Assembly: GCF_006345805.1 (NCBI RefSeq)
Contig: NC_043019.1
Coordinates: 11,655,360 to 11,719,359, forward strand
DNA length: 64,000 nucleotides
Direction: 5' to 3'
Source: Octopus sinensis
Taxonomy: Eukaryota
Positions within the stretch are counted from its first letter, which is position 1, and every line of letters starts with the position of its first letter. Below are positions 3 to 21,079 of the stretch, one piece after another. The notes beneath the pieces are model-generated. The model made no database searches and was not told where the DNA came from. It saw nothing but the letters and a program-made list of their open reading frames with translations. The position numbers and the translations under genes are program-made.

Positions 3-1919
3 CTTCAAAGTCCAACTATCAGATTCGTTGACCTTCCAAATTGCGATCGTAGCATCTTTCGATGCTGATATCAAATATCGATCATCAGCCGAAAAAACCA
101 GGTGTGTAACATCGAGACTATGACAAGGATAATCAAAAAATTTCCCACTTAGCGATGGAGGACACTCGATGCCTTTTATATAACCATTATTAGTTCCTAA
201 AAATAATATAGAATTGGAAGATGACAGAGCAATTGATGTGTAAACGACGCCACTCGCTGGAAACGTTCGCAATATATCCGACTCGTGGATTTCTTTCAAA
301 GAATGATCCGAGCCGACGGCATAAACATTTTTGGTCTCGGGATTATAAACAACATCGTTATAGGCGCAGGATTTCAAAACACACTGACCGATTCGCTTCC
401 CGGTTTTTAACTCCCAGTCATAAACTGCTCCATCCAAACCACATGAAAGGAGGTGATTATCATCCATAAACCAGGCGGTAGTTTTAACTTTGTCGTTGTG
501 ACCCTTCAGGTTGACCACCATTTCGAAAGTAATCGACGAGTATACCTGTATAAAGTTGTTGTTGACCGCTGCGAACATATGACCACCTCGGCTGAAGTTG
601 CAATGTGTACACATACGGATATTGAATTCTTGAAACGATTTCAAATCATCCATAAGAATATGCATGAAACGTAATTTGTCGTTGAAGCCTGCCAGAAGAA
701 ATAATCCCATTGGGTGCATAGATATGCTGTAGACTTCTTCTGAAAAGTCTTTAGAAAATTCTAAGGTAAACGTTTCGTAGTTCCACAGTTTTATAGAACC
801 GTCCAGAGAGCTGGTTGCAATGAAAGGTTTCCACGTACAAACACAACATCCAGTGATAGATTTAAAATGGAAAGGTTGAACTAAGACATCAAACTCACTC
901 GTTTTATTCATATATTTCAATTCAGGCTCAACAATGCCCGCAGAATACATTTGTTTCATATCGGTGATAATAACGAGAACCTCCTCCGATGGACTCACCA
1001 CCATCCATTTTATGATCTGCTTGCATAGTTGGCCATTTTCCAAAACATCTGACGGCATCCAAACATTCCTGACAAACTCGTAAGTATCCTTATTTTCAAT
1101 TCTTCCAAAAAACTGTACACTTTTCGTACCACACGCTGTAATAAATCCTTTAGCGTAACTGGCGATTGCTGTTACTCCGTGGCTCATTATAGAATCGTCG
1201 GACGTGTCCAAATATTGGTATACCTTAAAGTCAATTACTAAATCCGTATCTTCGATAAATAACACTCGAGCGGTGTTTGTACCCACCAAAAGCCGGTTGT
1301 TCGTGTCCCAGCAATAGCATTTGAAATCTTCACTATCGATTTTGGGGAAAGTAAACTGATTCACAATGCCTTCTGCGATGCGGAGCGATTTTAGATGTCC
1401 ATTGCCAAACACATACAACTGGAGATTATCGTGAGGGTTAAAAGTAATATGATAAAGAATCTCCGGCACATCAGACGTCGTGACATTGCTTGATATAAGC
1501 AGTTTCGATTTTTCCCACGACCAGTAAAGTAACGTTCCTAATTGGTCATCACATAGGGTGATGAGATAGCGAGAATCGTTCGAGAAACACATACTAATGA
1601 TCTTGGCAGAAAGTAATTCTGGGTAAACTAGCGACTTACTTTTCCGCGATGTGTACAATTCAAAAATGTTTACCGACGGCGTGTCGCATTTCAAAGCAAT
1701 GGCCGTATAGTTGCGTTTAGTACTTATAGCAATAGCAGTTATTTCAGACCCTTTCTGTGAAGTTTTGAACAACTTCATCGTATTTTCTTCGATGTTATAT
1801 AAAACACAGTGACAACCGCACGTATAGAGGATCGTCTGCTCATCGAAATAAAAGACATTCGTAAAAATATCCGCGTTAACTCCGGACAAATATTTTAATG
1901 TTGCTGTAGAGATAGACAT
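3..1919 (-). CDS. CFAP57: Intronless CFAP57/WDR65-like WD40 protein, copy 1 (first 639 codons; continues past window edge)
   Basis: ATG at 1919 reads MSISTATLKYLSGVNADIFTNVFYFDEQTILYTCG..., then QPFHFKSITGCCVCTWKPFIATSSLDGSIKLWNYE, ending SKDATIAIWKVNESDSWTLK at base 3 in the same frame. Colinear with ORF 17711-21079. The ORF track lists no minus-strand ORF here, consistent with no stop inside the window. Confidence 0.9.
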   Translation of the reverse strand, partial: MSISTATLKYLSGVNADIFTNVFYFDEQTILYTCGCHCVLYNIEENTMKLFKTSQKGSEITAIAISTKRNYTAIALKCDTPSVNIFELYTSRKSKSLVYPELLSAKIISMCFSNDSRYLITLCDDQLGTLLYWSWEKSKLLISSNVTTSDVPEILYHITFNPHDNLQLYVFGNGHLKSLRIAEGIVNQFTFPKIDSEDFKCYCWDTNNRLLVGTNTARVLFIEDTDLVIDFKVYQYLDTSDDSIMSHGVTAIASYAKGFITACGTKSVQFFGRIENKDTYEFVRNVWMPSDVLENGQLCKQIIKWMVVSPSEEVLVIITDMKQMYSAGIVEPELKYMNKTSEFDVLVQPFHFKSITGCCVCTWKPFIATSSLDGSIKLWNYETFTLEFSKDFSEEVYSISMHPMGLFLLAGFNDKLRFMHILMDDLKSFQEFNIRMCTHCNFSRGGHMFAAVNNNFIQVYSSITFEMVVNLKGHNDKVKTTAWFMDDNHLLSCGLDGAVYDWELKTGKRIGQCVLKSCAYNDVVYNPETKNVYAVGSDHSLKEIHESDILRTFPASGVVYTSIALSSSNSILFLGTNNGYIKGIECPPSLSGKFFDYPCHSLDVTHLVFSADDRYLISASKDATIAIWKVNESDSWTLK

Positions 1920-1956
1920 TTTCCCAAACTTGCTCGATTATTGTTCCTAAGATTAT

Positions 1957-1978
1957 ATGCATACACACTTCTCTCTTC

Positions 1979-2072
<94 letters not shown>

Positions 2073-2180
2073 CATACACACACACCTTCTGTGTGTGTGT
2101 GTGTATATATATTATATATATATATATATATATATGTACAAAGCTATATTTCTTTCTTTCTCTCTCTCTCTCTCTCTCTC

Positions 2181-2236
<56 letters not shown>

Positions 2237-2296
2237 TACATATGTCTCTCTCTATATACACATATACATATCTCTCTCTATATATACACATATACA

Positions 2297-2376
<80 letters not shown>

Positions 2377-2400
2377 CATACATACACACACACGCAATAT
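1957..2400. repeat. Compound microsatellite (ATCT)n/(CA)n/(TA)n/(CT)n
   Basis: Directly visible; explains the low-complexity ORFs 1941-2458. Confidence 0.95.
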
Positions 2401-2445
2401 TAAAAAAAAAAAATGAAAAGTAGGCTGAACTGTAGATGATGCTGA

Positions 2446-2463
2446 TCACGTGATTCAAATGAC
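2446..2463. promoter_or_regulatory. E-box-containing motif TCACGTGATTCAAATGAC upstream of CFAP57 copy 1
   Basis: 17/18 identical to 21171-21188, which lies upstream of copy 2; contains palindromic TCACGTGA. Confidence 0.55.
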
Positions 2464-2521
2464 GGCCCTTTTTTTCTGCGTTTTTTATTTTCTTAGTTTT
2501 TTTTAATTAATTTCCGTCATA

Positions 2522-2563
<42 letters not shown>

Positions 2564-2660
2564 GCGCTAAAGTATGAGTACAGTTTATACTATGAGAAAA
2601 AGAAAGATACGAAACTAACATACACATGAATACAACGTTATGATTATTACAGCAGGTTTA

Positions 2661-2685
2661 TTACGTCACAATACGGATGACGTCA
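2661..2685. promoter_or_regulatory. CRE/ATF-like sites (TTACGTCA at 2661, TGACGTCA at 2678)
   Basis: ATTACGTCA is also present at 21330-21338 upstream of copy 2. Confidence 0.4.
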
Positions 2686-2887
2686 TCATCACCACCATTA
2701 TCATCATCTTCGTTTTAGCGCCCACTTTCCCATGATTATACGGGTCAGACGGATTTTATTGAGACAGATTTTTTTCACGGCGGATGCCCCCCTTTCTGTC
2801 GCGAAGCTGCACCCATTTCCAAAGAAGGTTATATTTCCTTATGGCCAGACGTGATCGCACAGAATGCTGGAAATAAATAACATTGCT

Positions 2888-3040
2888 TGTATGAGGGGCC
2901 AGTGAAATGTTTCTGGCTTTAAAAAATCGTGAAAGGCCTGTTTGGAAACTCAACCTTTCGAGTTATTTTACAGGACTTACAAAAACTGAAGGACCTTTGC
3001 AATGAGTGTGTGAATCTGAGAAGGAGAATATGTTGAATAT
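2888..3040 (+). mobile_element. Mariner-like non-autonomous relic
   Basis: TATGAGGG start and a degraded transposase tail (...CVNLRxEYVE-like); same family at 63225-63410. Confidence 0.55.
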
Positions 3041-3629
3041 ATATATAAAAGAGAGGTTGTGTGCTGTCTGTCTCCTACTATTTAGATTCCTAACTACTCC
3101 CACATTTTGCGGTGCAGTTTAACCAAAACTGGGTATCTTATAGTCGTGATTCATATCGAGCCCTTCTGGGTATTAGCGCGCGTCTACGATGAGTCTACGA
3201 TTAAAAAAAAAATTACCATCAATTTTTCCCATTTTTAATGCATTTTTGGCATATATAAGGTTAGTAAGGAGAGACACAAATAAGTGAGAAGAAAACAAAG
3301 GACCACTGATGCGGTCACAAGAGTGTGACGAAAGAACTCTGGCCGAAATAAGATTAAGATTAATGTAAAAAATAAATATCACTGAAGCAAAATAACACCA
3401 AATATATAGTGCGTGTGTTTTTATTGGCTAAACTGGCAATATGACCATTCCGAAATATAACAAACTCTCTAAAAATTTATTATTAAATCTCAGAACGTAA
3501 AAAGCTACAGTAACACCCCCCCCCCTTGTGGTTAGTCATATTGAGATGGCTATTATACTTTACATCTCTAAAAATGCTTATATAGTTATTTCCCTTACAA
3601 ACCCGAGCAACGCCGGGCGATACTACTAG
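3040..3629 (+). mobile_element. Non-autonomous Helitron-type element
   Basis: TATATATAAAA 5' end; 3' CCCG...CGGG hairpin (CCCGAGCAACGCCGGG) followed by CTAG|T; same 3' end at 5188, 21698 and 49007 (minus). Confidence 0.75.
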
Positions 3630-3820
3630 TGTTGAATAAAATCATAATATTAACTCATGTATTTTCTTTTACTCAAAACCAGGAACTTTTCAGTATCCTC
3701 TCGTATGACAACCATTTTACAATTACCATTCGATGTCAAGACAGGGGGACACAAACATGCACACCCTCACATACGAAACATACACTCACGTAAGCGCGCG
3801 AGCACATACACACACAGATA

Positions 3821-3865
<45 letters not shown>

Positions 3866-3874
3866 ACACACACA

Positions 3875-3935
<61 letters not shown>

Positions 3936-4157
3936 TACTTAAATACACATACATATGCACAAACGGCTTCTTTCAGTTTTCTTCGACTAAATTCAAATAA
4001 CCCGGGGCTATTGTAGGGGACATTTGCCCAAGATGCCACACAATAGGACTTGAACCCAGAACCATGTGATTAGGATGCAAAATTATTACTACACAGCCAG
4101 GCTTGCTTTATTGTAACAATTAATCAAATAATGAGTGTTTTTTAAGCCCTCTAATTG

Positions 4158-4532: not shown

Positions 4533-4534
4533 CC

Positions 4535-5118: not shown

Positions 5119-5188
5119 ATAACTCTCTAAAAATGCTTATATAGTTATTTCCCTTACAAACCCGAGCAACGCCGGGCGATACTGCTAG
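5115..5188 (+). mobile_element. Helitron-type 3' terminus
   Basis: Near-identical to 3565-3629 and 21630-21698; hairpin plus CTAG. Confidence 0.75.
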
Positions 5189-5785: not shown

Positions 5786-5790
5786 ATATA

Positions 5791-6216: not shown

Positions 6217-6231
6217 TGGCTCCCCCTCGAG
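6217..6231 (+). promoter_or_regulatory. Primer-binding site, tRNA-Asp-like
   Basis: TGGCTCCCCCTCGAG abuts the LTR end; 13/15 match to the complement of the eukaryotic tRNA-Asp 3' end (TGGCTCCCCGTCGGG, from memory). Confidence 0.6.
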
Positions 6232-6773: not shown

Positions 6774-7582
6774 AGGCGCTATTGGAGACGCTACCATTGA
6801 TTGACGTGGAGGCCGAGGGGAAGACGTTCAAGGCCCTCGTGGATACGGGCTGTACGACCACCCTTGTGACTTCGAGGGTGACGAAGGAATGGAACGGGGT
6901 GAGTAGTGTCCGGGTGGTCGACGGCAGCGAAATCCGTTGCAGAAGCAGCAGCAAGGTAGAGATAGTGGTGCGCGGCGCGACGCTAAGGCTGTAGGCAATT
7001 GTGACCGAACGCGTGATAGATGGAGTTGATGTGGTGATGGGGATGGACGCAATCAACTGCCTCGGTGGCGTCAGTGTTGTGGGAAATGAGGTCACGTTCG
7101 GAATACTGGGGGCGTCGTGCACTGCGAGTCAGGATCGCCAGAGAGAGCAGAGCCCCGCGAGGGACTGCGCCGCTTACACCATCGAGGACAAAGACTTTCA
7201 GGCGGCGTTCGATGGTCAGCGGTGGACGATAGAGTGGCGATGGAAGGACGAGCCCCCGACGCTGGAAAACAGGGTGAGCTGTTACCAGCATATCCTGAAA
7301 GGCCACGCCAGGGTCGAGTTTGAAAACGAGGTGGAGAGGTGGATCGAGGAAGGGGTCCTTGTCCCTTGGAAGGAGGAGGTAGTGGGCGGAGTGCTACCCC
7401 TGATGGCGGTGGTGCAGCCTACGAAGGGAAGAGTCAGACCGGTGCTGGACTTCAGGGAGCTAAACCAGCACATATCGTGTCACACGGGAGGTGAGGTGAC
7501 AGACGTTTGTGGCGAGGTGTTACGTAAGTGGAGACAGTCGACCGAGGCAGCGACGATTGTCGACTTGAGATCGGCAGACTAA
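6719..7582 (+). pseudogene. pol: Gypsy pol: aspartic protease plus N-terminal RT, in-frame TAG at 6992-6994, truncated before the YxDD motif
   Basis: ALVDTGCTTTLV; VLPLMAVVQPTKGRVRPVLDFRELN; VDLRSA; -1 frame relative to gag. Confidence 0.85.
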
Positions 7583-8047: not shown

Positions 8048-11000
8048 TGGCATGAACGCCATGGGTACGGCATGAACGCCCAGGGTATGGTATGAAACTG
8101 TATCTGGTTGTGGGGTCACGACGTGAGAAGAACGCCGTGGGTACGGCATGAACGCCCAGGGTATGGTATGAAACTGCATCTGGTTGTGGGGTCACGACGT
8201 GAGAAGAACGCCGTGGGTACGGCATGAACGCCCAGGGTATGGTATGAAACTGAATCTGGTTGTGGGGTCACGACGTGAGAAGAACGCCGTGGGTACGGCA
8301 TGAACACCCAGGGTATGGTATGAAATTGCATCTGGTTGTGGGATCATGATGTGAGAAGAACGCCGTGGGTACGGCATGAACGCCCAAAGTATGGTATGAA
8401 ACTGAATCTGGTTGTGGCGTCACGACGTGAGAAGAAAGCCGTGGGTACGGCATGAACGCCCAAAGTATGGTATGAAACTGTATCTGGTTGTGGGATCATG
8501 ATGTGAGAAGAACGCCGTGGGTACGGCATGAACGCCCAAAGTATGGTATGAAACTGCATCTGGGTGTGGGATCATGATGTGAGAAGAACGCCGTGGGTAC
8601 GGCATGAACGCCCAAAGTATGGTATGAAACTGTATCTGGTTGTGGCGTCACGATGTGAGAAGAACGCCGTGGGTACGGCATGAACGCCCAAAGTATGGTA
8701 TGAAACTGAATCTGGTTGTGGCGTCACGACGTGAGAAGAACGCCGTGGGTACGGCATGAACGCCCAGGGTATGGTATGAAACTGTATCTGGTTGTGGGAT
8801 CATGATGTGAGAAGAACGCCGTGGGTACGGCATGAACGCCCAAAGTATGATATGAAACTGCATCTGGTTGTGGCGTCACGACGTGAGAAGAACAACGTGG
8901 GTACGGCATGAACGCCCAGGGTATGGTATGAAACTGCATCTGGTTGTGGCGTCACGACGTGAGAAGAACGCTGTGGGTACGGCATGAACGCCCAGGGTAT
9001 GGTATGAAACTGCATCTGGTTGTGGGATCACGATGTGAGAAGAACGCTGTGGGTACGGCATGAACGCCCAGGGTATGGTATGAAACTGCATCTGGTTGTG
9101 GCGTCACGACGTGAGAAGAACGCCGTGGGTACGGCATGAACACCCAGGGTATGGTATGAAACTGAATCTGGTTGTGGGATCACGATGTGAGAAGAACGCC
9201 GTGGGTACGGCATGAACGCCCAGGGTATGGTATGAAACTGCATCTGGTTGTGGCGTCACGATGTGAGAAGAACGCCGTGGGTACGGCATGAACGCCAAGG
9301 GTATGGTATGAAACTGAATCTGGTTGTGGGATCACGATGTGAGAAGAACGCCGTGGGTACGGCATGAACGCCCGGGGTATGGTATGAAACTGCATCTGGT
9401 TGTGGCATCACGATGTGAGAAGAACGCCGTGGGTACGGCATGAACGCCCAGGGTATGGTATGAAACTGCATCTGGTTGTGGATCACGATGTGAGAAGAAC
9501 GCCGTGGGTACGGCATGAACGCCAAGGGTATGGTATGAACTGCATCTGGTTGTGGATCACGATGTGAGAAGAACGCCGTGGGTACGGCATGAACGCCCAG
9601 GGTATGGTATGAAACTGCATCTGGTTGTGGATCACGATGTGAGAAGAACGCCGTGGGTACGGCATGAACGCCCAGGTATGGTATGAAACTGCATCTGGTT
9701 GTGGCGTCACGACGTGAGAAGAACGCCGTGGGTACGGCATGAACGCCCAGGGTATGGTATGAAACTGTATCTGGTTGTGGGATCACGATGTGAGAAGAAC
9801 GCCGTGGGTACGGCATGAACGTCCAGGGTATGGTATGAAACTGCATCTGGTTGTGGGATCACGATGTGAGAAGAACGCCGTGGGTACGGCATGAACGCCC
9901 AGGGTATGGTATGAAACTGCGTCTGGTTGTGGCGTCACGATGTGAGAAGAACGCCGTGGGTACGGCATGAACGCCAAGGGTATGGTATGAAACTGAATCT
10001 GGTTGTGGGATCACGATGTGAGAAGAACGCCGTGGGTACGGCATGAACACCCAGGGTATGGTATGAAACTGCATCTGGTTGTGGCGTCACGATGTGAGAA
10101 GAACGCCGTGGGTACGGCATGAACGCCCAGGGTATGGTATGAAACTGCATCTGGTTGTGGGATCACGATGTGAGAAGAACGCCGTGGGGACGGCATGAAC
10201 GCCCAGGGTATGGTATGAAACTGCATCTGGTTGTGGCGTCACGACGTGAGAAGAACGCCTTGGGTACGGCATGAACGCCCAGAGTATGGTATGAAACTGC
10301 ATCTGGTTGTGGGATCATGATGTGAGAAGAACGCCGTGGGTACGGCATGAACGCCCAGGGTATGGTATAAAACTGCATCTGGTTGTGGGATCACGATGTG
10401 AGAAGAACGCCGTGGGTATGGCATGAACGCCCAGGGTATGGTATGAAACTGCATCTGGTTGTGGGATCACGATGTGAGAAGAACGCCGTGGGTACGGCAT
10501 GAACGCCCAGGGTATGGTATGAAACTGCATCTGGTTGTGGCGTCACGACGTGAGAAGAACGCCCGGGTACGGCATGAACGCCCAGGGTGTGGTATGAAAC
10601 TGCATCTGGTTGTGGGATCATGATGTGAGAAGAACGCCGTGGGTACGGCATGAACGCCCAGGGTATGGTATGAAACTGCATCTGGTTGTGGGATCACGAT
10701 GTGAGAAGAACGCCGTGGTACGGCATAAACGCCCAGGGTATGGTAATGAACTGCATCTGGTTGTAGCGTCACGACGTGAGAAGAACGCCGTGGGTACGGC
10801 ATGAACGCCCAGGGTATGGTATGAAACTGTATCTGGTTGTGGGATCATGATGTGAGAAGAACGCCGTGGGTACGGCATCAACGCCCAGGGATGGTATGAA
10901 ACTGCATCTGGTTGTGGGATCATGATGTGAGAAGAACGCCGTGGGTACGGCATGAACGCCCAGGGTATGGTATGAAACTGCATCTGGTTGTGGGATCACG

Positions 11001-14000
11001 ATGTGAGAAGAACGCCGTGGGAACGGCATGAACGCCCAGGGTATGGTATGAAACTGCATCTGGTTGTGGCGTCACGACGTGAGAAGAACGCCGTACGTAC
11101 GGCATGAACGCCCAGGGTATGGTATGAAACTGTATCTGGTTGTGGGATCATGATGTGAGAAGAACGCCGTGGGTACGGCATGAACGCCCAGGGTATGGTA
11201 TGATGCAACTGCATCTGGTTGTGTGGATGATGATGTGAGAAGAACGCCGTGGGTACGGCATGGACGCCCAGGGTATGGTATGAAACTGCATCTGGTTGTG
11301 GGATCACGATGTGAGAAGAACGCCGTGGTACGGCATGAACGCCCAGGGTATGGTATGAAACTGCATCTGCTCCGGTTGTGGCGTCACGACGTGAGAAAAA
11401 CGCCGTGGGTACGGCATGAACGCCCAGGGTATGATATGAAACTGCATCTGGTTGTGCGTCACGACGTGAGAAGAACGCCGTGGGTACGGCATGAACGCCC
11501 AGGGTATGGTATGAAACTGTATCTGGCTGTGGGATCATGATGTGAGAAGAACGCCGTGGGTACGGCATGAACGCCCAAAGTATGATATGAAACTGCATCT
11601 GGTTGTGGCGTCACGACGTGAGAAGAACGCTGTGGGTACGGCATGAACGCCCAGGGTATGGTATGAAACTGCATCTGGTTGTGGGATCACGATGTGAGAA
11701 GAACGCTGTGGGTACGGCATGAACGCCCAGGGTATGGTATGAAACTGCATCTGGTTGTGGCGTCACGACGTGAGAAGAACGCGTGGGGTACGGCATGACA
11801 CCCAGGGTATGGTATGAAACTGAATCTGGTTGTGGCGTCACGACGTGAGAAGAACGCCGTGGGTACGGCATGAACGCCCAGGGTATGGTATGAAACTGCA
11901 TCTGGTTGTGGGATCATGATGTGAGAAGAACGCCGTGGGTACGGCATGAACGCCCAGGGTATGGTATGAAACCGCATCTGGTTGTGGGATCACGATGTGA
12001 GAAGAACGCCGTGGGTATGGCATGAACGCCCAGGGTATGGTATGAAACTGCATCTGGTTGTGGCGTCACGACGTGAGAAGAACGCCGTGGGTACGGCATG
12101 AACGCCCAGGGTATGGTATGAAACTGTATCTGGTTGTGGGATCACGATGTGAGAAGAACGCCGTGGGTACGGCATGAACGTCCAGGGTATGGTATGAAAC
12201 TGCATCTGGTTGTGGGATCACGATGTGAGAAGAACGCCGTGGGTACGGCATGAACGCCCAGGGTATGGTATGAAACTGCATCTGGTTGTGGCGTCACGAC
12301 GTGAGAAGAACGCCGTGGGTACGGCATGAACGCCCAGGGTGTGGTATGAAACTGCATCTGGTTGTGGGATCATGATGTGAGAAGAACGCCGTGGGTACGG
12401 CATGAACGCCCAGGGTATGGTATGAAACTGCATCTGGTTGTGGGATCACGATGTGAGAAGAACGCCGTGGGTACGGCATAAACGCCCAGGGTATGGTATG
12501 AAACTGCATCTGGTTGTAGCGTCACGACGTGAGAAGAACGCCGTGGGTACGGCATGAACGCCCAGGGTATGGTATGAAACTGTATCTGGTTGTGGGATCA
12601 TGATGTGAGAAGAACGCCGTGGGTACGGCATCAACGCCCAGGGATGGTATGAAACTGCATCTGGTTGTGGGATCATGATGTGAGAAGAACGCCGTGGGTA
12701 CGGCATGAACGCCCAGGGTATGGTATGAAACTGCATCTGGTTGGGATCACGATGTGAGAAGAACGCCGTGGGAACGGCATGAACGCCCAGGGTATGGTAT
12801 GAAACGCATCTGGTTGTGGCGTCACGACGTGAGAAGAACGCCGTACGTACGGCATGAACCCCAGGGTATGGTATGAAACTATATCTGGTTGTGGGATCAC
12901 GATGTGAGAAGAACGCCGTGGGTACGGCATGAACGCCCAGGTATGGTATGAACTGCATCTGGTTGTGGATCATGATGTGAGAAGAACGCCGTGGGTACGG
13001 CATGGACGCCCAGGGTATGGTATGAAACTGCATCTGGTTGTGGGATCACGATATGAGAAGAACGCCGTGGTTACGGCATGAACGCCCAGGGTATGGTATG
13101 AAACTGCATCCGGTTGTGGCGTCACGACGTGAGAAAAACGCCGTGGGTACGGCATGAACGCCCAGGGTATGATATGAAACTGCATCTGTTGTGGCGTCAC
13201 GACGTGAGAAGAACCCGTGGGTACGGCATGAACGCCCAAAGTATGGTATGAAACTGCATCTGGTTGTGGGATCATGATGTGAGAAGAACGCCGTGGGTAC
13301 GGCATGAACGCCCAGGTATGGTATGAAACTGCATCTGGTTTTGGGATCACGATGTGAGAAGAACGCCGTGGGTACGGCATGAACGCCAGGGTATGGTATG
13401 AAACTGCATCTGGTTGTGGCGTCACGACGTGAGAAGAACGCGTGGGGTACGGCATGAACGTCCAGGGTATGGTATGAAACTGTATCTGGTTGTGGGATCA
13501 TGATGTGAGAAGAACGCCGTGGGTACGGCATGAACGCCCAGGGTATGGTATGAAACTGCATCTGGTTGTGGATCATGATGTGAGAAGAACGCCGTGGGTA
13601 CGGCATGAACGCCCAGGGTATGGTATGAAACTGCATCCGGTTGTGGCGTCACGACGTGAGAAAAACGCCGTGGGTACGGCATGAACGCCCAGGGTATGGT
13701 ATGAAACTGCATCTGGTTGTGGCGTCACGACGTGAGAAGAACGCCGTGGGTACGGCATGAACGCCCAGGGTATGGTATGAAACTGTATCTGGTTGTGGGA
13801 TCACGATGTGAGAAGAACGCCGTGGTACGGCATGAACGTCCAGGGTATGGTATGAACGCATCTGGTTGTGGGATCACGATGTGAGAAGAACGCCGTGGGT
13901 ACGGCATGAACGCCCAGGGTATGGTATGAAACTGCATCTGGTTGTGGCGTCACGACGTGAGAAGAACGCCGTGGGTACGGCATGAACGCCCAGGGTGTGG

Positions 14001-16697
14001 TATGAAACTGCATCTGGTTGTGGGATCATGATGTGAGAAGAACGCCGTGGGTACGGCATGAACGCCCAGGGTATGGTATGAAACTGCATCTGGTGTGGGA
14101 TCACGATGTGAGAAGAACGCCGTGGGTACGGCATAACGCCCAGGGTATGGTATGAAACTGCATCTGGTTGTGGCGTCACGACGTGAGAAGAACGCCGTGG
14201 GTACGGCATGAACGCCCAGGGTATGGTATGAACTGTATCTGGTTGTGGATCATGATGTGAGAAGAACGCCGTGGGTACGGCATCAACGCCCAGGGATGGT
14301 ATGAAACTGCATCTGGTTGTGGGATCATGATGTGAGAAGAACGCCGTGGGTACGGCATGAACGCCCAGGGTATGGTATGAAACTGCATCTGGTTGTGGGA
14401 TCACGATGTGAGAAGAACGCCGTGGGAACGGCATGAACGCCCAGGGTATGGTATGAAACTGCATCTGGTTGTGGCGTCACGACGTGAGAAGAACGCCGTG
14501 GGTACGGCATGAACGCCCAGGGTATGGTATGAAACTATATCTGGTTGTGGGATCATGATGTGAGAAGAACGCCGTGGGTACGGCATGAACGCCCAGGGTA
14601 TGGTATGAAACTGCATCTGGTTGTGGGATCATGATGTGAGAAGAACGCCGTGGGTACGGCATGAACGCCCAGGGTATGGTATGAAACTGCATCTGGTTGT
14701 GGGATCACGATGTGAGAAGAACGCCGTGGGTACGGCATGAACGCCCAGGGTATGGTATGAAACTGCATCCGGTTGTGGCGTCACGACGTGAGAAAAACGC
14801 CGTGGGTACGGCATGAACGCCCAGGGTATGATATGAAACTGCATCTGGTTGTGGCGTCACGACGTGAGAAGAACGCCGTGGGTACGGCATGAACGCCCAA
14901 AGTATGGTATGAAACTGCATCTGGTTGTGGGATCATGATGTGAGAAGAACGCCGTGGGTACGGCATGAACGCCCAGGGTATGGTATGAAACTGCATCTGG
15001 TTTTGGGATCACGATGTGAGAAGAACGCCGTGGGTACGGCATCAACGCCCAGGGTATGGTATGAAACTGCATCTGGTTGTGGCGTCACGACGTGAGAAGA
15101 ACGCCGTGGGTACGGCATGAACGTCCAGGGTATGGTATGAAACTGTATCTGGTTGTGGGATCATGATGTGAGAAGAACGCCGTGGGTACGGCATGAACGC
15201 CCAGGGTATGGTATGAAACTGCATCTGGTTGTGGGATCATGATGTGAGAAGAACGCCGTGGGTACGGCATGAACGCCCAGGGTATGGTATGAAACTGCAT
15301 CTGGTTGTGGGATCACGATGTGAGAAGAACGCCGTGGGTACGGCATGAACGCCCAGGGTATGGTATGAAACTGCATATGGTTGTGGGATCATGATGTGAG
15401 AAGAACGCCGTGGGTACGGCATGAACGCCCAGGGTATGGTATGAAACTGCATCTGGTTGTGGGATCATGATGTGAGAAGAACGCCGTGGGTACGGCATGA
15501 ACGCCCAGGGTATGGTATGAAACTGCATCTGGTTGTGGGATCATGATGTGAGAAGAACGCCGTGGGTACGGCATAAACGCCCAGGGTATGGTATGAAACT
15601 GCATCTGGTTGTGGGATCACGTTGTGTGAAGAACGCCGTGGGTACGGCATGAACGCCCAGGGTATGGTATGAAACTGCATCTGGTTGTGGCGTCACGACG
15701 TGAGAAGAACGCCGTGGGTACGGCATGAACGCCCAGGGTATGGTATGAAACTGTATCTGATTGTGGGATCATGATGTTAGAAGAACGCCGTGGGTACGGC
15801 ATGAACGCCCAGGGTATGGTATGAAACTGCATCTGGTTGTGGGATCATGATGTGAGAAGAACGCCGTGGGTACGGCATGAACGCCCAGGGTATGGTATGA
15901 AACTGCATCTGGTTGTGGGATCACGATGTGAGAAGAACGCCGTGGGTACGGCATGAACGCCCAGGGTATGGTATGAAACTGTATCTGGTTGTGGGATCAT
16001 GATGTGAGAAGAACGCCGTGGGTACGGCATGAACGCCCAGGGTATGGTATGAAACTGCATCTGGTTGTGGGATCACGATGTGAGAAGAACGCCGTGGGTA
16101 CGGCATGAACGCCCAGGGTATGGTATGAAACTGCATCTGGTTGTGGCGTCACGACGTGAGAAGAACGCTGTGGGTACGGCATGAACGCCCAGGGTATGGT
16201 ATGAAACTGCATCTGGTTGTGGGATCATGATGTGAGAAGAACGCCGTGGGTACGGCATGAACGTCCAGGGTATGGTATGAAACTGCATCTGGTTGTGGGA
16301 TCACGATGTGAGAAGAACGCCGTGGGTACGGCATGAACGCCCAGGGTATGGTATGAAACTGCATCTGGTTGTGGCGTCACGACGTGAGAAGAACGCCGTG
16401 GGTACGGCATGAACGCCCAGGGTATGGTATGAAACTGCCTCTGGTTGTGGGATCATGATGTGAGAAGAACGCCGTGGGAACGGCATGAACGCCCAGGGTA
16501 TGGTATGAAACTGCATCTGGTTGTGGGATCATGATGTGAGAAGAACGCCGTGGGTACGGCATGAACGCCCAAAGTATGGTATGAAACTGCATCTGGTTGT
16601 GGCGTCACGACGTGAGAAGAACGCCGTGGGTACGGCATGAACGCCCAGGGTATGGTATGAAAGTGCATCTGGTGGTGACGTCACGACCTGAGTAGAA
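8048..16697. repeat. 76-bp tandem satellite, roughly 113 monomers
   Basis: Consensus GGTATGGTATGAAACTGCATCTGGTTGTGGGATCACGATGTGAGAAGAACGCCGTGGGTACGGCATGAACGCCCAG; ORF starts recur every 76 bp. Confidence 0.98.
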
Positions 16698-17082
16698 CAG
16701 GGTTACCCTAAACTGCCACTATCTTTAGGTCGCCGTTGGGAAAAGTGTAGTACCTCTAAGCCCACCCCGAGACCTAGAAATACCATGTTGGCGTCCGGCG
16801 GAGTTAAGGCTGTCTCATGGTAGGAGTGGTCCCTTTAGCCTTGGTCTGCAATCCCTCTAGAAAGGTGACTCAATAAAAACACCGATCGTTGTGCTACCTC
16901 AACACCAAAATTCTTAGAATGTCAAATACGAAGATATAAAAAAAAATGTATGGAATGAGACTGGAACTAAAAACAGTGCACCCGAGGGTGTGTGTGGACC
17001 CCCGGAGCCTTGGCTACCAACTCAATGATTGCACAACTTTACAAATTCCATCTCTAAATGAGTAATGTAAAAATTAAATATA

Positions 17083-17456
17083 TAGGTGTAGGAGTAACTG
17101 TGTGGTAAGTAGCTGCTTACCAACCACATGGTTCCGGGTTCAGTCTCACTTTGTGGCACCTTGGGCAAGTTTCTTCTACTATAGCCTCGGGCCGACCAAA
17201 GCCTTGTGAGTGGATTTGGTAGACGGAAACTGAAAGAAGCCCGTCGTTATATGTGTCTGTGTTAGTCCCCCCAACGTGGCTTGACAACCGATGCTGGTGT
17301 GTTTATGTCCCCGTAACTTAGCGGTTCGGCAAAAGAGACCAATAGAATAAGTACTAAGCTTACAAAGAATAAGTCCTGAGGTCGATTTGCTCGACCAAAG
17401 GCGGTGCTCCAGCATGGCCACAGTCACATGACTGAAACAAAAGAGTAAAAGAGAAT
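17083..17456 (+). mobile_element. tRNA-derived SINE, family A
   Basis: Full head-to-tail similarity to 4158-4532. Confidence 0.8.
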
Positions 17457-17710
17457 AGCCACAACTGTGCTAACGGGACTGGAACTGTTAATAGTGAAGG
17501 TGTCGCGCCCGGCAGGTCGTCATCAAGCTATTGAGATGAAAGACTTCGGTGAGATTAACTTTATTAGTTATAACAATATTATTAAAAAATTCTTGCTTCG
17601 CAGCAGTTTTACTCTATGTAAAACAGACATATTGCAAAATATGATTCGTTTCGTTTCATTCAAATGATTATAGTGATATGAATAAATAAACAGGATCCAA
17701 TACGTAATTT

Positions 17711-20700
17711 TCATTTAGCTCTCTCGAGTATCGATTGCAAACGATGGTTTTGATGTCTGGCTTTCTGCAATATATCTCCTATGTTATTGCATTTCGTTAG
17801 CAAGCGATTAGTATCTCGAGAAACATGTTTTGTGGTGCTGTTCAGCTGATACTTTACTTTGTGTATGGTGTATTCGAAATGGTTCCGTTGCCGATTCCAT
17901 TCCAGTTGTACGCCGGGTTCTGTAATGACAATCTTATCGGTCTTCTCGATGTATTTTTTATAAAGAAATTTGATACTGTTCTTCAGCTTTTGCGGTTCTT
18001 GTAGGACGGACATGCAACTGAAAAGATCGGAGCAGAATAGGTTCAACACAGCTGTTTTTTTGTACAGCACCGTGCGTACTTGGTCCAGTTCTTGCGAGGT
18101 GGATGTTAACTTCTCTTTCGTTTCTGCTATCGTGTGGCCCATGGTGACAAACTGGTGGGCAAAGTATGCTAGTTCGGTTTCCATAGCGCTGATCTGCATT
18201 TTCAAGTTATCAATTGCCGTCTCCCTCACTTCGACTTGGCGTTTCAATTCGATGATATTTTTATGTTCCAGTTCACATTTTGACGCCTCGATTTCTTGAT
18301 TCTTCAACTTCAGGTCACAAAAACGTTTCTCTTCATCATTTAGCCCTTGAAATTGGATCTCTGTTTCGTTTAACAGGTGACTTATATCTTTCTCCAGATT
18401 ATTCTTAACAATGTTTAGTCTTTTTACTTCCATTTTGTATTTCTGGCATTCATCTTCACTATCTTTTAGTTCTTTGGGGAAAGCTAAGAGTTTCTTCTTC
18501 AAAACGTCATTTTGGTCTTTCGTATCAGAATTAGAATTTCTCTCGATATATAACTGTTTCTCATATTCGGTTTTTTTCTTGATATATTCTCTTTCGGCAT
18601 CCCTCTCTATCCGCTTCTCTTCCTTATCGTGTTCCCTCTGCTTTATCAAAATTTCTTCCTCGTACTTATCAATTTCTTCCTCTAAATCTTCGAGTTTCTT
18701 TTTGTATTCTTTTTCCAACTGTTCTTCTAGATATTCATGTTCTTCTACCATATCTTGTTCTTGTTGCTCCTGTTCTTCATGTAGTGTCACCATTCTTGCA
18801 CGGAGCTTCTTGTATTTTTCACATTCTTGCAATAACTTCTTATCACCAACACTATTGAGGGATTCTACGTCTGTGGAATGCTGTTCAATAATTTTTGCCA
18901 TTTGTTCGTCAAACATAGCCTTATCTCTGACTTTATCGCTCTCTAGAAATTTATTTTTGCTTACCAAATTTTCTTTTTCTTGAATATGATTTTCGCGTAT
19001 CCCATTTAATTTGACCTTGAAGCTCATGTCTCTGAGATACAATTCGTACAAGTTTTCATTGGAGAGGTTTTCTACACGGGATTTCAGATTTAAAATTTCA
19101 GAATTTTTTGTTTTCAATCCTTGGCTCGGATATAAAACTTCTTCTATCCAAATGGCACTCAGGTCCCGTCTGAAACTTCGACCTTCAGAATCACTAACGT
19201 TCCATATTGCAATCGAAGAATCTGTTGATGTTGAAATTAAATATCGATCATCGAGTGTAAAAATCACGTGCGTAATTTCGAGATTATGACAAGGATAATC
19301 AACATATTTTCCATTTAAAATTATAGGATACTCCATACTTCTTATATGACCATTATTAGTTCCCACAAATAGCACTGTATTGGACCATGACAGAGCAATC
19401 GATGTGTAAAGAACATTTTCCGTTCGCAATGCTCGTAATAATTGAGACTTGTAGATTTCTTTCAAGGAATAATCCGAACCAACGACGTATATTTTTTTCT
19501 CGAAATTCATTGCAAGATCGTTATAAGCGCATGATTTCAAGGCACAATGACTAATTCGCTTCCCGGTTTTTATTTCCCATTCGTAAATTGCTCCACCCAA
19601 GTCGCATGAGATAAGGTTATCATCATCCATACACCAGACGGTAGTTCGAATTTTGCTGTTGTGACCTTTTAGTTTAAATAGCCTTTCGAAATTAATCGCC
19701 GAGAACACTAGTATGAAGTTATTGCTGACCGCCGCGAACATTTGACCACCTCGACTGAAGTTGCAATGCGTACACATGCGGATATCGAATTCCTTAAACT
19801 GTTTGAAGTCGTTCTTACGAATATACATGAAACGTAATTTGTCGCTGAAGCCTGCCAGAAGAAATAGTCCCATTGGGTGCATAGATATGCTGTAGACTTC
19901 TGATGAAAAATTTGCAGAAAATTCTAAGCTACACGTTTTGTAGTTCCATAGTTTTATAGAACCGTCTAGAGAGCTGGTTACAATGAAAGGTTTCCACGTA
20001 CAAACACAACATCCAGTGATAGGTTTAAAATGGAAAGGTTGAACTAAGACATCAAACACAATTACTTTATTCGAATGTTCTGTTCCTGGTGGATTAACTG
20101 GTGTAGAATACAGTTGTTTCATGTTGGTGCTAATAGCGAGAAAGTCCTCCGATGGATTCACCACCATCCATTTTATAATCTGGTCATGCAGGTCACTGTT
20201 GTCCAAAGCATGTGACGGCAGATATACACTCCTGACAAACTTGTAAGTATCCTTGGCCTCAACCCATTCAAAAAAGTGCACAGATTTACCACACGCTGTA
20301 ATAAACCCTTCAGAATAACTGGAAATAGCCGTTACTCCATATGACTTGACGGATTCGTCGGAAATATTCGTATATTGGAATACATTAAAGTCAAGTCTTA
20401 AATCCTTATCTTCGATAAACAACACTCGGCCACTGCCTGTACCCACCAAAAGACGTTGGTTCGCATCCCAGCAATAGCATTTGAAATCTTGAGGTACGAT
20501 CTTCGGAAAATTGAATTGTTTGTTTTCGCATCCTTCGAAGCGGAACAATTTAAGGAACTTGTTGCCAAATATATACACGTTGAAATGTGTTTGAGGGTTG
20601 AAAGTAAGGCAATAAAGAGTCTCCGGTGCCACAGAAACTGTCACTTTGGTCAAGAGAAGTAGTTTCGATCTTTTCCATGACCAGTAAATTAAGGTTCGTG

Positions 20701-21079
20701 ATGGGTCGTCACACATGGCCACAAGATATCGAGATAAATATGAAAAAGCCAAACTAATGATCTTACAAGATTGCAATTCGTGGCAAATTAAAGTTTTTAT
20801 TTTCTGCACAGTTAACAAATCAAAAATGTTCACAGTTGGTTTCTCGGAATTCAAAGCAACGGCCGAATAGTTACGGTCCGGAGATACAGCCATGGCAGTT
20901 ATTTTAGTTCCTTTCTCTGATGCTATGAGAAACCGCATGTTTTTCTGTTCGGTGTTAAAAAGGACACAATAACAACCACACGTATAAAAGATAGTTCGTT
21001 CATCGAGATAAAAAAAAATGCTAGAAATATCCGAGTTGATTCCAATCAAATATTTTAAAGTCGCTTTAGACAAAGCCAT
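17711..21079 (-). CDS. CFAP57: Intronless CFAP57/WDR65-like protein, copy 2 (1122 aa; WD40 repeats plus coiled coil)
   Basis: Uninterrupted ORF. FYLDERTIFY, ITGCCVCTWKPFIVTSSLDGSIKLWNY, GFSDKLRFM, FSRGGQMFAAV, LKGHNSKIR, CALKSCAYN and VGSDYSLKEI match CFAP57 family motifs in order; Glu/Lys-rich coiled-coil C-terminal half. Confidence 0.92.
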   Translation of the reverse strand: MALSKATLKYLIGINSDISSIFFYLDERTIFYTCGCYCVLFNTEQKNMRFLIASEKGTKITAMAVSPDRNYSAVALNSEKPTVNIFDLLTVQKIKTLICHELQSCKIISLAFSYLSRYLVAMCDDPSRTLIYWSWKRSKLLLLTKVTVSVAPETLYCLTFNPQTHFNVYIFGNKFLKLFRFEGCENKQFNFPKIVPQDFKCYCWDANQRLLVGTGSGRVLFIEDKDLRLDFNVFQYTNISDESVKSYGVTAISSYSEGFITACGKSVHFFEWVEAKDTYKFVRSVYLPSHALDNSDLHDQIIKWMVVNPSEDFLAISTNMKQLYSTPVNPPGTEHSNKVIVFDVLVQPFHFKPITGCCVCTWKPFIVTSSLDGSIKLWNYKTCSLEFSANFSSEVYSISMHPMGLFLLAGFSDKLRFMYIRKNDFKQFKEFDIRMCTHCNFSRGGQMFAAVSNNFILVFSAINFERLFKLKGHNSKIRTTVWCMDDDNLISCDLGGAIYEWEIKTGKRISHCALKSCAYNDLAMNFEKKIYVVGSDYSLKEIYKSQLLRALRTENVLYTSIALSWSNTVLFVGTNNGHIRSMEYPIILNGKYVDYPCHNLEITHVIFTLDDRYLISTSTDSSIAIWNVSDSEGRSFRRDLSAIWIEEVLYPSQGLKTKNSEILNLKSRVENLSNENLYELYLRDMSFKVKLNGIRENHIQEKENLVSKNKFLESDKVRDKAMFDEQMAKIIEQHSTDVESLNSVGDKKLLQECEKYKKLRARMVTLHEEQEQQEQDMVEEHEYLEEQLEKEYKKKLEDLEEEIDKYEEEILIKQREHDKEEKRIERDAEREYIKKKTEYEKQLYIERNSNSDTKDQNDVLKKKLLAFPKELKDSEDECQKYKMEVKRLNIVKNNLEKDISHLLNETEIQFQGLNDEEKRFCDLKLKNQEIEASKCELEHKNIIELKRQVEVRETAIDNLKMQISAMETELAYFAHQFVTMGHTIAETKEKLTSTSQELDQVRTVLYKKTAVLNLFCSDLFSCMSVLQEPQKLKNSIKFLYKKYIEKTDKIVITEPGVQLEWNRQRNHFEYTIHKVKYQLNSTTKHVSRDTNRLLTKCNNIGDILQKARHQNHRLQSILERAK

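What the first reader, a model, noticed from the sequence alone, without database searches (positions are those of the whole stretch)
3..21079. Two tandem, open, intronless CFAP57/WDR65 paralogs, one invisible in the ORF track
Seen: a 1122-aa single-exon ORF and, ~16 kb downstream on the same strand, a second single-exon ORF of at least 639 codons running off the window. By eye they are about 55% identical at the N-terminus and about 85% in the central WD40s. Known: CFAP57 is a conserved axonemal inner-dynein-arm-associated protein, usually encoded by many exons (about 1250 aa in human). Inference: an old retrocopy or intron-loss allele was tandemly duplicated and both copies were kept under selection, possibly as sperm-flagellum-specialised paralogs. 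Copy 2 has a shortened C-terminus.
Basis: partly seen in the sequence, partly recalled or inferred. Interest (0 to 1): 0.7.

Follow-up and report, generated by a model that had tools for sequence, protein, structure and literature searches.

The report
Intronless CFAP57 gene cluster in octopus
Two neighbouring single-exon copies of the cilium/sperm-tail protein CFAP57 in Octopus sinensis are real and intact, and they belong to a five-gene fast-evolving octopus cluster that arose by ancient total intron loss followed by local DNA duplication; this is an interesting gene-family story, but the genes are already annotated and the mechanisms are known kinds.

Summary
Copy A (17711-21079, minus strand) is a 1122-codon single ORF. 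Copy B (3-1919, minus strand) is the first 639 codons of a 1123-codon single ORF that continues past the window edge.

The window is Octopus sinensis chromosome CM016881.1, and both proteins are already in RefSeq as 'CFAP57-like'. Both are full-length homologues of axonemal CFAP57 (E=1e-210 to human CFAP57 in PDB 8j07).

They are two of five clustered single-exon paralogs conserved in O. sinensis, O. vulgaris and O. bimaculoides. A sixth, canonical-type CFAP57 (1255 aa) lies 1.5 Mb away and is also intronless. No multi-exon parent was found. Scallop CFAP57 has at least 17 coding exons, and a cuttlefish relative is intronless, so the intron loss is ancient (coleoid-wide).

A 17-nt promoter motif, unique to the two upstream regions within the window, shows the cluster grew by DNA duplication rather than repeated retroposition.

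Copy B is under purifying selection (pN/pS 0.49). Copy A evolves at pN/pS 0.92, yet neutral simulation predicts about 15 stops (0 of 5000 runs stay open), so its frame is selectively maintained.

Sperm specialisation is untested. This is a new member of known kinds, of moderate interest.

The parts
17711..21079 (-). Copy A: complete single-exon CFAP57-like gene, 1122 codons plus stop (O. sinensis protein P0342; ortholog of O. bimaculoides P0002)
   Evidence: ORF. E=1e-210 to human CFAP57 in 8j07, collinear over residues 8-1080. Pfam tandem beta-propellers. The exact protein is annotated on CM016881.1. 78.6% identical to the O. bimaculoides ortholog, pN/pS 0.92, frame retained.
3..1919 (-). Copy B: N-terminal 639 codons of a single-exon 1123-codon CFAP57-like gene that continues beyond the left window edge (O. 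sinensis P0343; ortholog of O. bimaculoides P0004)
   Evidence: Open frame. Identical to P0343 residues 1-639. The full 3372-bp ORF is present in O. vulgaris locus L007. pN/pS 0.49.
21080..21383 (-). Conserved 5'UTR/promoter block of copy A, containing the shared motif CATTTGGATCACGTGAC at 21186..21170 (107 nt upstream of the ATG)
   Evidence: 93-94% identical to O. bimaculoides, i.e. more conserved than the CDS. The motif is identical in three species.
2436..2466 (-). Copy B copy of the same promoter motif (GTCATTTGAATCACGTGATCAGCATCAT; core at 2461..2445), 542 nt upstream of the ATG
   Evidence: With up to 3 mismatches this motif occurs only twice in both strands of the 64-kb window, each time sense-upstream of a CFAP57 copy.
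1963..2415 (.). Compound microsatellite tract (GATA, TA, GA, TG runs) that separates copy B's promoter motif from its 5'UTR
   Evidence: Sequence read directly. It is the source of the spurious 160-aa '+' ORF at 1941..2423.
1920..1962 (-). Copy B 5'UTR segment homologous to copy A's (..AACAATAATCGAGCAAGTTTGGGAAA|ATG versus ..AACAGTAATCGGGTAAGTTTGGGGAACGATTTCAA|ATG)
17454..17710 (-). Copy A 3'UTR block conserved with O. bimaculoides. AATAAA lies at 17565..17560, about 150 nt after the stop. A 41-nt stretch around it is 85% identical, at the same offset, to the 3' flank of paralog P0003.

Best explanation
The window is Octopus sinensis chromosome CM016881.1. It carries two adjacent members, A and B, of a cluster of five single-exon CFAP57-like genes, interrupted by a TTL-family gene. 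The cluster is conserved in O. sinensis, O. vulgaris and O. bimaculoides.

Origin. An ancestral cephalopod CFAP57, of the roughly 20-exon type that other molluscs have, lost all coding introns at once through an RNA intermediate. That was either retroposition with loss of the parent or recombination with a cDNA. The loss happened before the octopus-cuttlefish split. The intronless gene then duplicated into two lineages:
- a slowly evolving canonical-type gene (1255 aa);
- a divergent lineage that lost the C-terminal ~90 residues and part of a propeller-1 loop.

In octopods the divergent lineage expanded by local DNA-level duplications that carried the promoter and UTRs.

Function. All copies keep the CFAP57 architecture of two beta-propellers plus a ~430-aa coiled coil. 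By homology to solved axonemes, that architecture forms a dimeric filament along the 96-nm repeat and docks inner dynein arms g and d. I infer that the paralogs supply alternative or heterodimeric versions of this filament in particular axonemes, most plausibly the sperm flagellum. I also infer that the near-neutral amino-acid rate of copy A, together with strict ORF maintenance, reflects diversifying selection layered on structural constraint.

Shown here: identity, intron state, family structure, duplication mode, rates and ORF maintenance. Inferred: RNA-mediated intron loss, axonemal role, tissue specificity and positive selection.
For: Identity:
- E=1e-210 to human CFAP57, plus hits to the Chlamydomonas, Tetrahymena and Trypanosoma CFAP57 paralog chains.
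- beta-propeller Pfam families.
- coiled-coil length 426-433 aa and only 2-4 prolines in every copy.

Source and annotation: (L012 is identical to window 7711-31079).

Intron state:
- Single exons for A, B, P0002, P0003, P0004 and P0008.
- Single exons for Argonauta P0007, the cuttlefish-type P0010 and canonical P0300.
- Scallop has at least 17 coding exons.
- No cephalopod appears among the 120 best relatives of snail CFAP57.

Phylogeny:
- Octopod cluster 100% bootstrap; with cuttlefish 100%; with P0300 98%.
- The last grouping is robust to gamma correction at 95-100%.
- Cuttlefish and the octopod copies share the same deletions.

DNA-level duplication:
- All five genes lie within 150 kb of one chromosome.
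- The 17-nt motif occurs only upstream of A and B in the window, and also upstream of P0003 and P0008.
- 5'UTR and 3'UTR blocks are shared.

Selection:
- B has pN/pS 0.49, p=3e-7. A has 0.92. The A versus B difference has p=0.0017.
- Neutral simulations give 15 stops for A and 12 for B, with 0 of 5000 runs open.
- The A CDS has 2 indels, both of 3 nt, against 5 indels in 550 nt of flank.
- Ortholog identity runs 98, 97, 87, 79, 77 and 73% across the six orthogroups.

Role of CFAP57 and its paralogs: PMC7444499 and PMC10504270.
Against: - No expression or proteomic data could be examined. No paper mentions CFAP57 in octopus.
- The 90% clusters of A and B contain no member from SRA-derived (Logan) assemblies, whereas the canonical and cuttlefish-type clusters do. 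This is weak negative evidence for broad expression.
- No poly(A) remnant or target-site duplication is visible at copy A. None is expected after this much time.
- The canonical-type gene lies on the same chromosome, which suits in-situ cDNA conversion as well as retroposition.
- Positive selection is not demonstrated. Whole-gene omega of A is indistinguishable from 1. The shared hot spot at codons 601-750 (omega 1.65 in A, 2.09 in B) is borderline at p=0.053.
- The MK-like contrast (269N:75S against 6N:6S, p=0.033) rests on 12 differences between two closely related species.
- No RFX X-box was found upstream.
- The trees are distance-based only.
Confidence: 0.8

Rival explanations
1. Copy A (and the other fast paralogs) is an unconstrained duplicate drifting towards pseudogene status that merely happens to be still open.
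For: pN/pS of A between O. sinensis and O. bimaculoides is 0.92 (NG86) or 1.29 (YN00), not different from 1 (p=0.44). Amino-acid identity is only 78.6%, against 98% for the canonical gene. The A cluster has no SRA-derived protein members.
Against: Placing the observed 344 substitutions at random gives a mean of 15 stop codons, and 0 of 5000 runs stay open. The 1122-codon frame is intact in O. sinensis, O. vulgaris and O. bimaculoides. The only two CDS indels are 3 nt each, while the flanks carry 5 indels in 550 nt. The promoter block and motif are identical in three species. The coiled-coil length and low proline content are preserved.
Confidence: 0.04
2. Each copy arose by its own retroposition of a spliced CFAP57 mRNA, rather than by DNA duplication of an already intronless gene.
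For: Every family member is intronless. Reverse-transcriptase-bearing elements are abundant in the region.
Against: Five genes lie within about 150 kb in two same-orientation blocks. A, B, P0003 and P0008 share a promoter-proximal motif and flanking block that lie upstream of the coding region, and the motif occurs nowhere else in 2x64 kb. 5'UTR and 3'UTR blocks are shared at the same offsets. The copies share derived deletions, and the tree is nested as expected for serial duplication.
Confidence: 0.05
3. The first step was not retroposition to a new site with loss of the parent. It was in-situ replacement of the intron-containing gene by recombination with its own cDNA, or gradual intron loss. 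On this reading the canonical-type P0300 still sits at the ancestral CFAP57 locus.
For: The canonical-type gene is intronless, no separate parent is found, and it lies on the same chromosome as the cluster, 1.5 Mb away.
Against: Nothing tested here discriminates between the two. Synteny of P0300 with CFAP57 neighbours in scallop or abalone could not be examined because the look-ups were exhausted. Simultaneous loss of about 19 introns is classically explained by retroposition, and retrogene replacement is documented (amphioxus SYCP1, PMC5803294).
Confidence: 0.3
4. The paralogs are not sperm-specific. They are obligate heterodimer partners, or doublet- or region-specific variants used in all octopus motile cilia, or in different ciliated tissues (statocyst, olfactory organ, oviduct, embryonic epidermis).
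For: Tetrahymena uses a CFAP57A/C heterodimer (PMC10504270; PDB 8tid chains W and w). Trypanosoma has CMF5/CMF6 (9e5c). Chlamydomonas FBB7 is proposed to serve other doublets (PMC7444499). The shared promoter motif suggests co-regulation of the cluster copies.
Against: Rates of 73-79% ortholog identity at dS of about 0.12 are atypical for core components of somatic cilia and typical for reproductive proteins (general knowledge). The slow P0003-type (97%) and canonical (98%) genes could cover the somatic need. No expression data were available.
Confidence: 0.3

Closest known systems
Metazoan CFAP57 (WDR65; Chlamydomonas FAP57/BOP2), the inner-dynein-arm g/d docking filament of the 96-nm axonemal repeat (PDB 8j07, 9d2f, 8glv)
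   Same: Collinear full-length homology (E=1e-210 to 1e-141). Two N-terminal beta-propellers and a ~430-aa coiled coil. Nested inside the molluscan CFAP57 clade.
   Different: Single exon instead of about 20. Five clustered paralogs plus one canonical gene, where animals normally have one ('humans have no paralog', PMC7444499). Only 36-48% identical to abalone CFAP57, against 64% for the canonical octopus gene and 76-86% among other invertebrates. Lacks the C-terminal ~90 residues and 18 residues of a propeller-1 loop.
Protist CFAP57 paralog systems: Tetrahymena CFAP57A-D (A/C heterodimer, PDB 8tid), Trypanosoma CMF5/CMF6 (9e5c), Chlamydomonas FAP57/FBB7
   Same: Several CFAP57 paralogs in one genome. 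All were recovered as significant structural-database hits for copy A. They offer a precedent for heterodimeric or position-specific filaments.
   Different: Those paralogs are ancient and deeply diverged (FBB7 is about 24% identical to FAP57). The octopus paralogs arose within cephalopods, are tandemly clustered and intronless, and their assembly state is unknown.
Retrogene replacement followed by tandem expansion (e.g. amphioxus SYCP1 retrogene replacement, PMC5803294; teleost intron-less opsins, PMC10339062)
   Same: A multi-exon gene in relatives, only single-exon copies in the focal lineage, and no surviving parent.
   Different: Retroposition hallmarks (poly(A), TSDs, new locus) could not be shown. 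The later expansion was by DNA duplication that carried the promoter.

Membership tests
CFAP57/WDR65/FAP57 | Full-length collinear sequence homology to CFAP57 chains identified in solved axonemes | tested here: met
   human 8j07_i4 E=1.3e-210 (query 8-234 and 248-1080 against chain 8-235 and 284-1120); Chlamydomonas 8glv_Cp E=2.7e-141 over residues 2-1094.
CFAP57/WDR65/FAP57 | Architecture: two N-terminal WD40 beta-propellers followed by a long C-terminal coiled coil | tested here: met
   Pfam Beta-prop_EML_2 scores above its gathering cut-off in both copies, and Beta-prop_EML covers residues 59-296. The coiled-coil segment is 428 aa with 3 prolines and 50% E/K/Q/L/R.
CFAP57/WDR65/FAP57 | Phylogenetic placement inside the CFAP57 orthogroup | tested here: met
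   NJ bootstrap 98-100% for cluster + cuttlefish + canonical octopus CFAP57. With gamma correction, nested in Mollusca at 66-96%. All best non-cephalopod hits are CFAP57.
CFAP57/WDR65/FAP57 | Canonical C-terminal tail beyond the last coiled-coil segment | tested here: not met
   Copies A and B, all the other cluster members and the cuttlefish protein end about 93 residues before canonical octopus P0300, and about 65 before abalone. This is a variant feature and does not argue against homology.
CFAP57/WDR65/FAP57 | Axonemal localisation and requirement for inner dynein arms g/d | not testable with these tools
   Needs proteomics, cryo-ET or a knockout.
Processed retrogene | Absence of all introns present in orthologs of related taxa | tested here: met
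   Single ORFs against at least 17 coding exons in Pecten maximus.
Processed retrogene | Intron-containing parental gene elsewhere in the same genome | tested here: not met
   The only canonical-type octopus CFAP57 found (P0300/P0335) is itself a single 3768-bp exon. No other cephalopod hit appeared. Only annotated proteins were searched, not whole genomes.
Processed retrogene | Poly(A) remnant and target-site duplications at the insertion | tested here: inconclusive
   None is visible downstream of copy A. An AATAAA lies 150 nt after the stop, followed by a SINE-like repeat. These marks are expected to have decayed given the age of the event (before the octopus-cuttlefish split).
Tandem (DNA-level) gene duplicates | Adjacent, same orientation, with homology extending into non-coding flanks or the promoter | tested here: met
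   A and B are on the same strand, 15.8 kb apart. The shared 17-nt motif with its flanking block occurs only upstream of the copies. 5'UTR and 3'UTR blocks are shared.
Pseudogene | Frame disruption or evolution indistinguishable from neutral in every respect | tested here: not met
   Substitution ratio near 1 for A only. However, 0 of 5000 neutral simulations keep the ORF, the indels are in-frame only, and the frame is intact in three species.

The most novel reading that the evidence does not exclude
Octopods have turned the normally single-copy axonemal 'address' filament CFAP57 into a multi-paralog system. In this reading, sperm-expressed copies (A and the P0177/P0178 types) are driven by sexual selection to diversify, especially at the junction between propeller 2 and the coiled coil. 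They would assemble as alternative or heterodimeric filaments that re-specify which inner dynein arms dock where. That would be an animal counterpart of the ciliate and trypanosome paralog heterodimers, and a case where the waveform-determining axonemal scaffold itself is a target of sperm competition.
Probability: 0.2. Interest if true: 0.65.

Novelty: new member of a known kind. Interest (0 to 1): 0.4.

Why it matters
CFAP57 is a conserved single-copy gene in animals. Its loss causes primary ciliary dyskinesia and inner-dynein-arm defects.

A lineage with six intronless copies evolving at widely different rates (98% down to 73% ortholog identity over the same species split) is a natural experiment. 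It bears on how the 96-nm-repeat docking filament tolerates or exploits sequence change. It also bears on whether paralog heterodimers, so far known only in protists, can arise in animals, and on retrogene replacement followed by tandem expansion in cephalopod genomes.

It gives concrete, testable candidates for sperm-flagellum specialisation in octopus. It is not a new kind of element: the genes are already machine-annotated, and the evolutionary processes are well known.

Tried and rejected
1. Further CFAP57 fragments or a multi-exon parent inside the window. tblastn finds only A and B.

2. An intron in O. bimaculoides P0005 (5968-bp gene span). It is an assembly gap of Ns spliced out by the gene model, not evidence of an intron.

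3. Retroposition hallmarks at copy A. There is no A-rich tail or TSD.

4. An RFX X-box upstream of eight family members. No match to a strict consensus.

5. Literature on CFAP57 in octopus or cephalopods, octopus retrogenes, and testis expression. Nothing relevant was found.

6. My first regex for the promoter motif missed copy B because of two substitutions. Reading the sequence directly and rescanning with fuzzy matching corrected this.

7. Long-branch attraction as the cause of the grouping of P0300 with the divergent lineage. The grouping persists at 95-100% with gamma-corrected distances and with only the slowest divergent members. No ML or Bayesian tree could be run.

8. Pfam on other long ORFs in the window. 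The 195-200-aa ORFs at 9.2-14.5 kb and the three overlapping ~1330-aa ORFs at 54.3-58.4 kb are read-throughs of satellites. Others gave no hits.

Full report
OBSERVATION

The ORF list shows a 1122-aa ATG-started ORF at 17711..21079 on the minus strand. Translating the minus strand at the left edge gives a frame that is open from a stop at 1938-1940 down to base 3, with an ATG at 1919. That is 639 codons running off the window. It is absent from the ORF list only because edge-truncated ORFs are not listed.

The two products are 62% identical over 640 residues. No other CFAP57-like fragment exists in the window.

WHAT THE GENES ARE

Copy A matches human CFAP57 in the axoneme structure 8j07 at E=1.3e-210. 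The match is collinear over residues 8-1080. It also matches the CFAP57 chains of mouse or sea-urchin type entries, Chlamydomonas (8glv), Tetrahymena (8tid W/w) and Trypanosoma (9e5c CMF5/CMF6). Pfam finds the two EML-type beta-propellers in both copies. The ~430-aa C-terminal segment has the composition of a coiled coil, with 3 prolines and 50% E/K/Q/L/R.

SOURCE AND ANNOTATION STATUS

The exact 1122-aa protein is encoded on Octopus sinensis GCA_006345805.1 chromosome CM016881.1. The fetched locus is base-for-base identical to window 7711-31079. Copy A (P0342) and copy B (P0343, 1123 aa) are both already present in NCBI and UniRef. The window fragment of B equals P0343 residues 1-639. In the 96-99% identical O. 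vulgaris assembly, B is a single uninterrupted 3372-bp ORF. So B does not break outside the window.

A LARGER FAMILY

Homology searches and genomic look-ups show five orthogroups of ~1100-aa CFAP57-like genes within about 150 kb of one chromosome in O. bimaculoides:
- P0005, P0008 and P0003 on one strand at 11.66-11.69 Mb;
- P0002 (the A ortholog, 78%) and P0004 (the B ortholog, 88%) on the other strand at 11.80-11.81 Mb, with a TTL-family gene just upstream of A.

O. sinensis and O. vulgaris have the same set. Consecutive O. vulgaris accessions CAI9739337, -338, -339 and -341 give the same order.

P0002, P0003, P0004 and P0008 are single exons. The apparent intron of P0005 is an assembly gap. 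Argonauta hians has at least two members, and P0007 is a single exon.

P0010 is a 1093-aa single-exon gene on an ENA contig. It belongs to the 90% cluster of Sepia (Acanthosepion) pharaonis CAE1241817.1, so it is a cuttlefish gene.

NO MULTI-EXON PARENT

With a snail CFAP57 as query, the 120 best hits were all at least 50% identical. They spanned gastropods, bivalves, a chiton, annelids, cnidarians and vertebrates, but included no cephalopod.

Querying with the cuttlefish protein revealed P0300. This is a 1255-aa O. vulgaris protein, with O. bimaculoides ortholog XP_014784883.1 at 98% identity. It has the canonical Pfam signature and 64% identity to abalone CFAP57. It lies 1.54 Mb from A and B on the same chromosome and is itself a single 3768-bp exon.

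Scallop CFAP57, by contrast, has at least 17 detectable coding exons over 10.4 kb. So intronlessness is not mollusc-wide. It does apply to every cephalopod CFAP57 gene I could examine.

PHYLOGENY AND ORDER OF EVENTS

NJ trees with bootstrap give:
- the octopod cluster monophyletic at 100%;
- cluster plus cuttlefish at 100%;
- that clade plus canonical P0300 at 98%.

The last grouping survives gamma correction and restriction to the slowest members (95-100%). All cephalopod sequences then nest inside Mollusca (66-96%).

Cuttlefish and all octopod cluster copies share two derived deletions relative to P0300 and to other animals. One is 18 residues of a propeller-1 loop. The other is the entire C-terminal tail, about 93 residues.

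B groups with Argonauta P0009 (98%), so the A/B split predates the Octopus-Argonauta divergence.

The most parsimonious history has three steps:
1. one complete intron loss in the cephalopod or coleoid stem;
2. duplication into a canonical and a divergent lineage before the octopus-cuttlefish split;
3. expansion of the divergent lineage in octopods.

MODE OF EXPANSION

The 17-nt element CATTTGGATCACGTGAC, allowing up to 3 mismatches, occurs exactly twice in both strands of the 64-kb window. One hit is at 21186..21170, 107 nt upstream of A's ATG. The other is at 2461..2445, 542 nt upstream of B's ATG. Both are in sense orientation.

In B the element has been displaced by a ~450-bp compound microsatellite. 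The element, with similar flanking sequence (...TTTAAAGCCTCGYTTT...), is also found upstream of O. bimaculoides P0008 (exact match) and P0003 (3 mismatches). It is identical upstream of A in three species. It is absent within 1.5 kb of P0300, the cuttlefish gene and Argonauta P0007.

A and B also share about 40 nt of 5'UTR. A and P0003 share a 41-nt block around the AATAAA at the same offset after the stop. These shared non-coding blocks, together with the clustering, indicate DNA-level duplication of an already intronless gene together with its promoter. They argue against repeated retroposition.

SELECTION

Between the O. sinensis/vulgaris lineage and O. bimaculoides (dS about 0.12), copy B has pN/pS 0.49, significantly below 1 (p=3e-7). 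Copy A has 0.92 by NG86 and 1.29 by YN00, not different from 1 (p=0.44). A is significantly higher than B (p=0.0017).

However, distributing A's 344 observed substitutions at random yields a mean of 15 stop codons, and none of 5000 simulations stays open. For B the figures are 12 stops and 0 of 5000.

A's CDS has only two indels, both of 3 nt. Its 550 nt of flanks have five. The frame is intact in three species. The coiled-coil length is held at 426-433 aa in all paralogs. So A is maintained as a protein while its residues turn over at about the synonymous rate.

Ortholog protein identity over the same species split runs as follows:
- canonical: 98.0%
- P0003-type: 97.0%
- B: 86.8%
- A: 78.6%
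- P0178/P0008 type: 77.3%
- P0177/P0005 type: 73.2%

Both A and B show their highest omega at codons 601-750, the junction between propeller 2 and the coiled coil. The values are 1.65 for A and 2.09 for B, and the combined test against neutrality gives p=0.053. In B the region differs from the rest of the gene at p=0.0007.

An MK-like contrast gives 269N:75S long-term against 6N:6S between O. sinensis and O. vulgaris, p=0.033. These results suggest positive selection but do not demonstrate it.

HOW IT LIKELY WORKS (INFERENCE FROM HOMOLOGY)

CFAP57 forms a dimeric coiled-coil filament that spans the 96-nm repeat. Its propellers sit near the I1 dynein base and its C-terminus near RS1 of the next repeat. 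It is required for docking of inner dynein arms g and d (PMC7444499, PMC10504270).

Tetrahymena uses a CFAP57A/C heterodimer, and Chlamydomonas FBB7 is thought to serve other doublets. Humans have no paralog.

The octopus copies keep the full architecture but lack the C-terminal tail. I therefore infer that they build variant filaments, either homo- or heterodimeric, in particular axonemes. The rate pattern points to sperm flagella for the fast copies, with the canonical and P0003-type genes plausibly serving general cilia. None of this could be tested. No paper mentions CFAP57 in octopus. The protein clusters of A and B contain no SRA-derived members, unlike the canonical and cuttlefish clusters.

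COMPARISON AND VERDICT

By sequence, architecture and phylogeny these are members of the CFAP57 family. They have a variant C-terminus. Their origin fits RNA-mediated intron loss, although the retrogene criteria of a surviving parent and poly(A)/TSD marks are not met or are inconclusive. Later growth was by tandem or segmental DNA duplication.

The genes are already machine-annotated and the processes are familiar. The family as such appears undescribed in the literature I could search. I rate it a new member of known kinds, with moderate interest (0.4).

Noticed in passing
window 8054-16698: An 8.6-kb satellite of 76-bp units (about 114 copies, 93% matches, GC 0.53, strong G>C skew) fills most of the spacer between copies A and B. 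The five or so 195-200-aa minus-strand 'ORFs' at 9.2-14.5 kb (MQFHTIPWAFMPYPRRSSH...) are read-throughs of it. The array looks shorter in the O. vulgaris assembly: the fetched locus L007 shows about 2.2 kb of it, and the A-B spacer there is about 10.5 kb against 15.8 kb in the window.
   Followed up: partly
window 24393 to beyond 31079, minus strand: The 3' part of a multi-exon tubulin-tyrosine-ligase-like (PF03133 TTL) gene with a 534-aa product lies immediately upstream of copy A. It is in the same position in O. bimaculoides. It is another tubulin/axoneme-related gene sitting inside the CFAP57 cluster. Co-expression was not examined.
   Followed up: partly
window 54532-58337: A 3.8-kb GT-rich satellite (34-bp unit GTGTGTGAATGTGTGCATGTGTGAATGTGAGTAC, about 114 copies; GC skew up to 0.75). 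It produces three overlapping stop-free 'ORFs' of about 1330 aa on the minus strand. These are artefacts, not genes.
   Followed up: yes
window 17093-17453 (and L001 525-919, 7360-7731): A ~360-bp SINE-like interspersed repeat directly downstream of copy A's 3'UTR. Related copies lie elsewhere in the window (26764-27146, 28757-28941) and in the O. bimaculoides locus, at 74-88% identity.
   Followed up: no
window 22211-22657 (minus) and 7001-7582 (plus): Retroelement debris flanks the genes. One is a zf-RVT (zinc-binding in reverse transcriptase) fragment 1.1 kb upstream of copy A (Pfam E=9e-8). The other is an RT-like ORF (…RPVLDFRELNQHI…) in the A-B spacer that gave no Pfam hit at E<=1e-3.
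   Followed up: partly
O. bimaculoides/O. sinensis paralogs P0005/P0177 and P0008/P0178 (loci L004, L005): Two further cluster members evolve even faster than copy A (73% and 77% ortholog identity). In O. vulgaris they are annotated only as ~520-530-aa C-terminal fragments (CAI9739337, CAI9739338). P0008 and P0178 are also N-terminally shorter (983 and 1086 aa). Whether any of these is decaying was not resolved.
   Followed up: no
window 38017-38708 and 41636-42195; 31100-31778; 59552-60100: Long (ACC)n, (TATG)n and (TA)n microsatellites. The 327-aa '+' ORF at 37917-38900 is a read-through of the (ACC)n tract.
   Followed up: no
L007 21524-23231 (O. vulgaris, downstream of copy B): A Wntless (WLS_GOLD/WLS-like_TM) gene lies on the opposite strand, about 8 kb beyond the 3' end of copy B. 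It marks the distal boundary of the cluster.
   Followed up: no
gene models P0001, P0006 (O. vulgaris), P0007, P0009 (Argonauta): Several deposited gene models start at the internal Met48 rather than at the conserved first ATG. The 47 upstream codons are open and homologous to the CFAP57 N-terminus, so these annotations are probably N-terminally truncated.
   Followed up: yes
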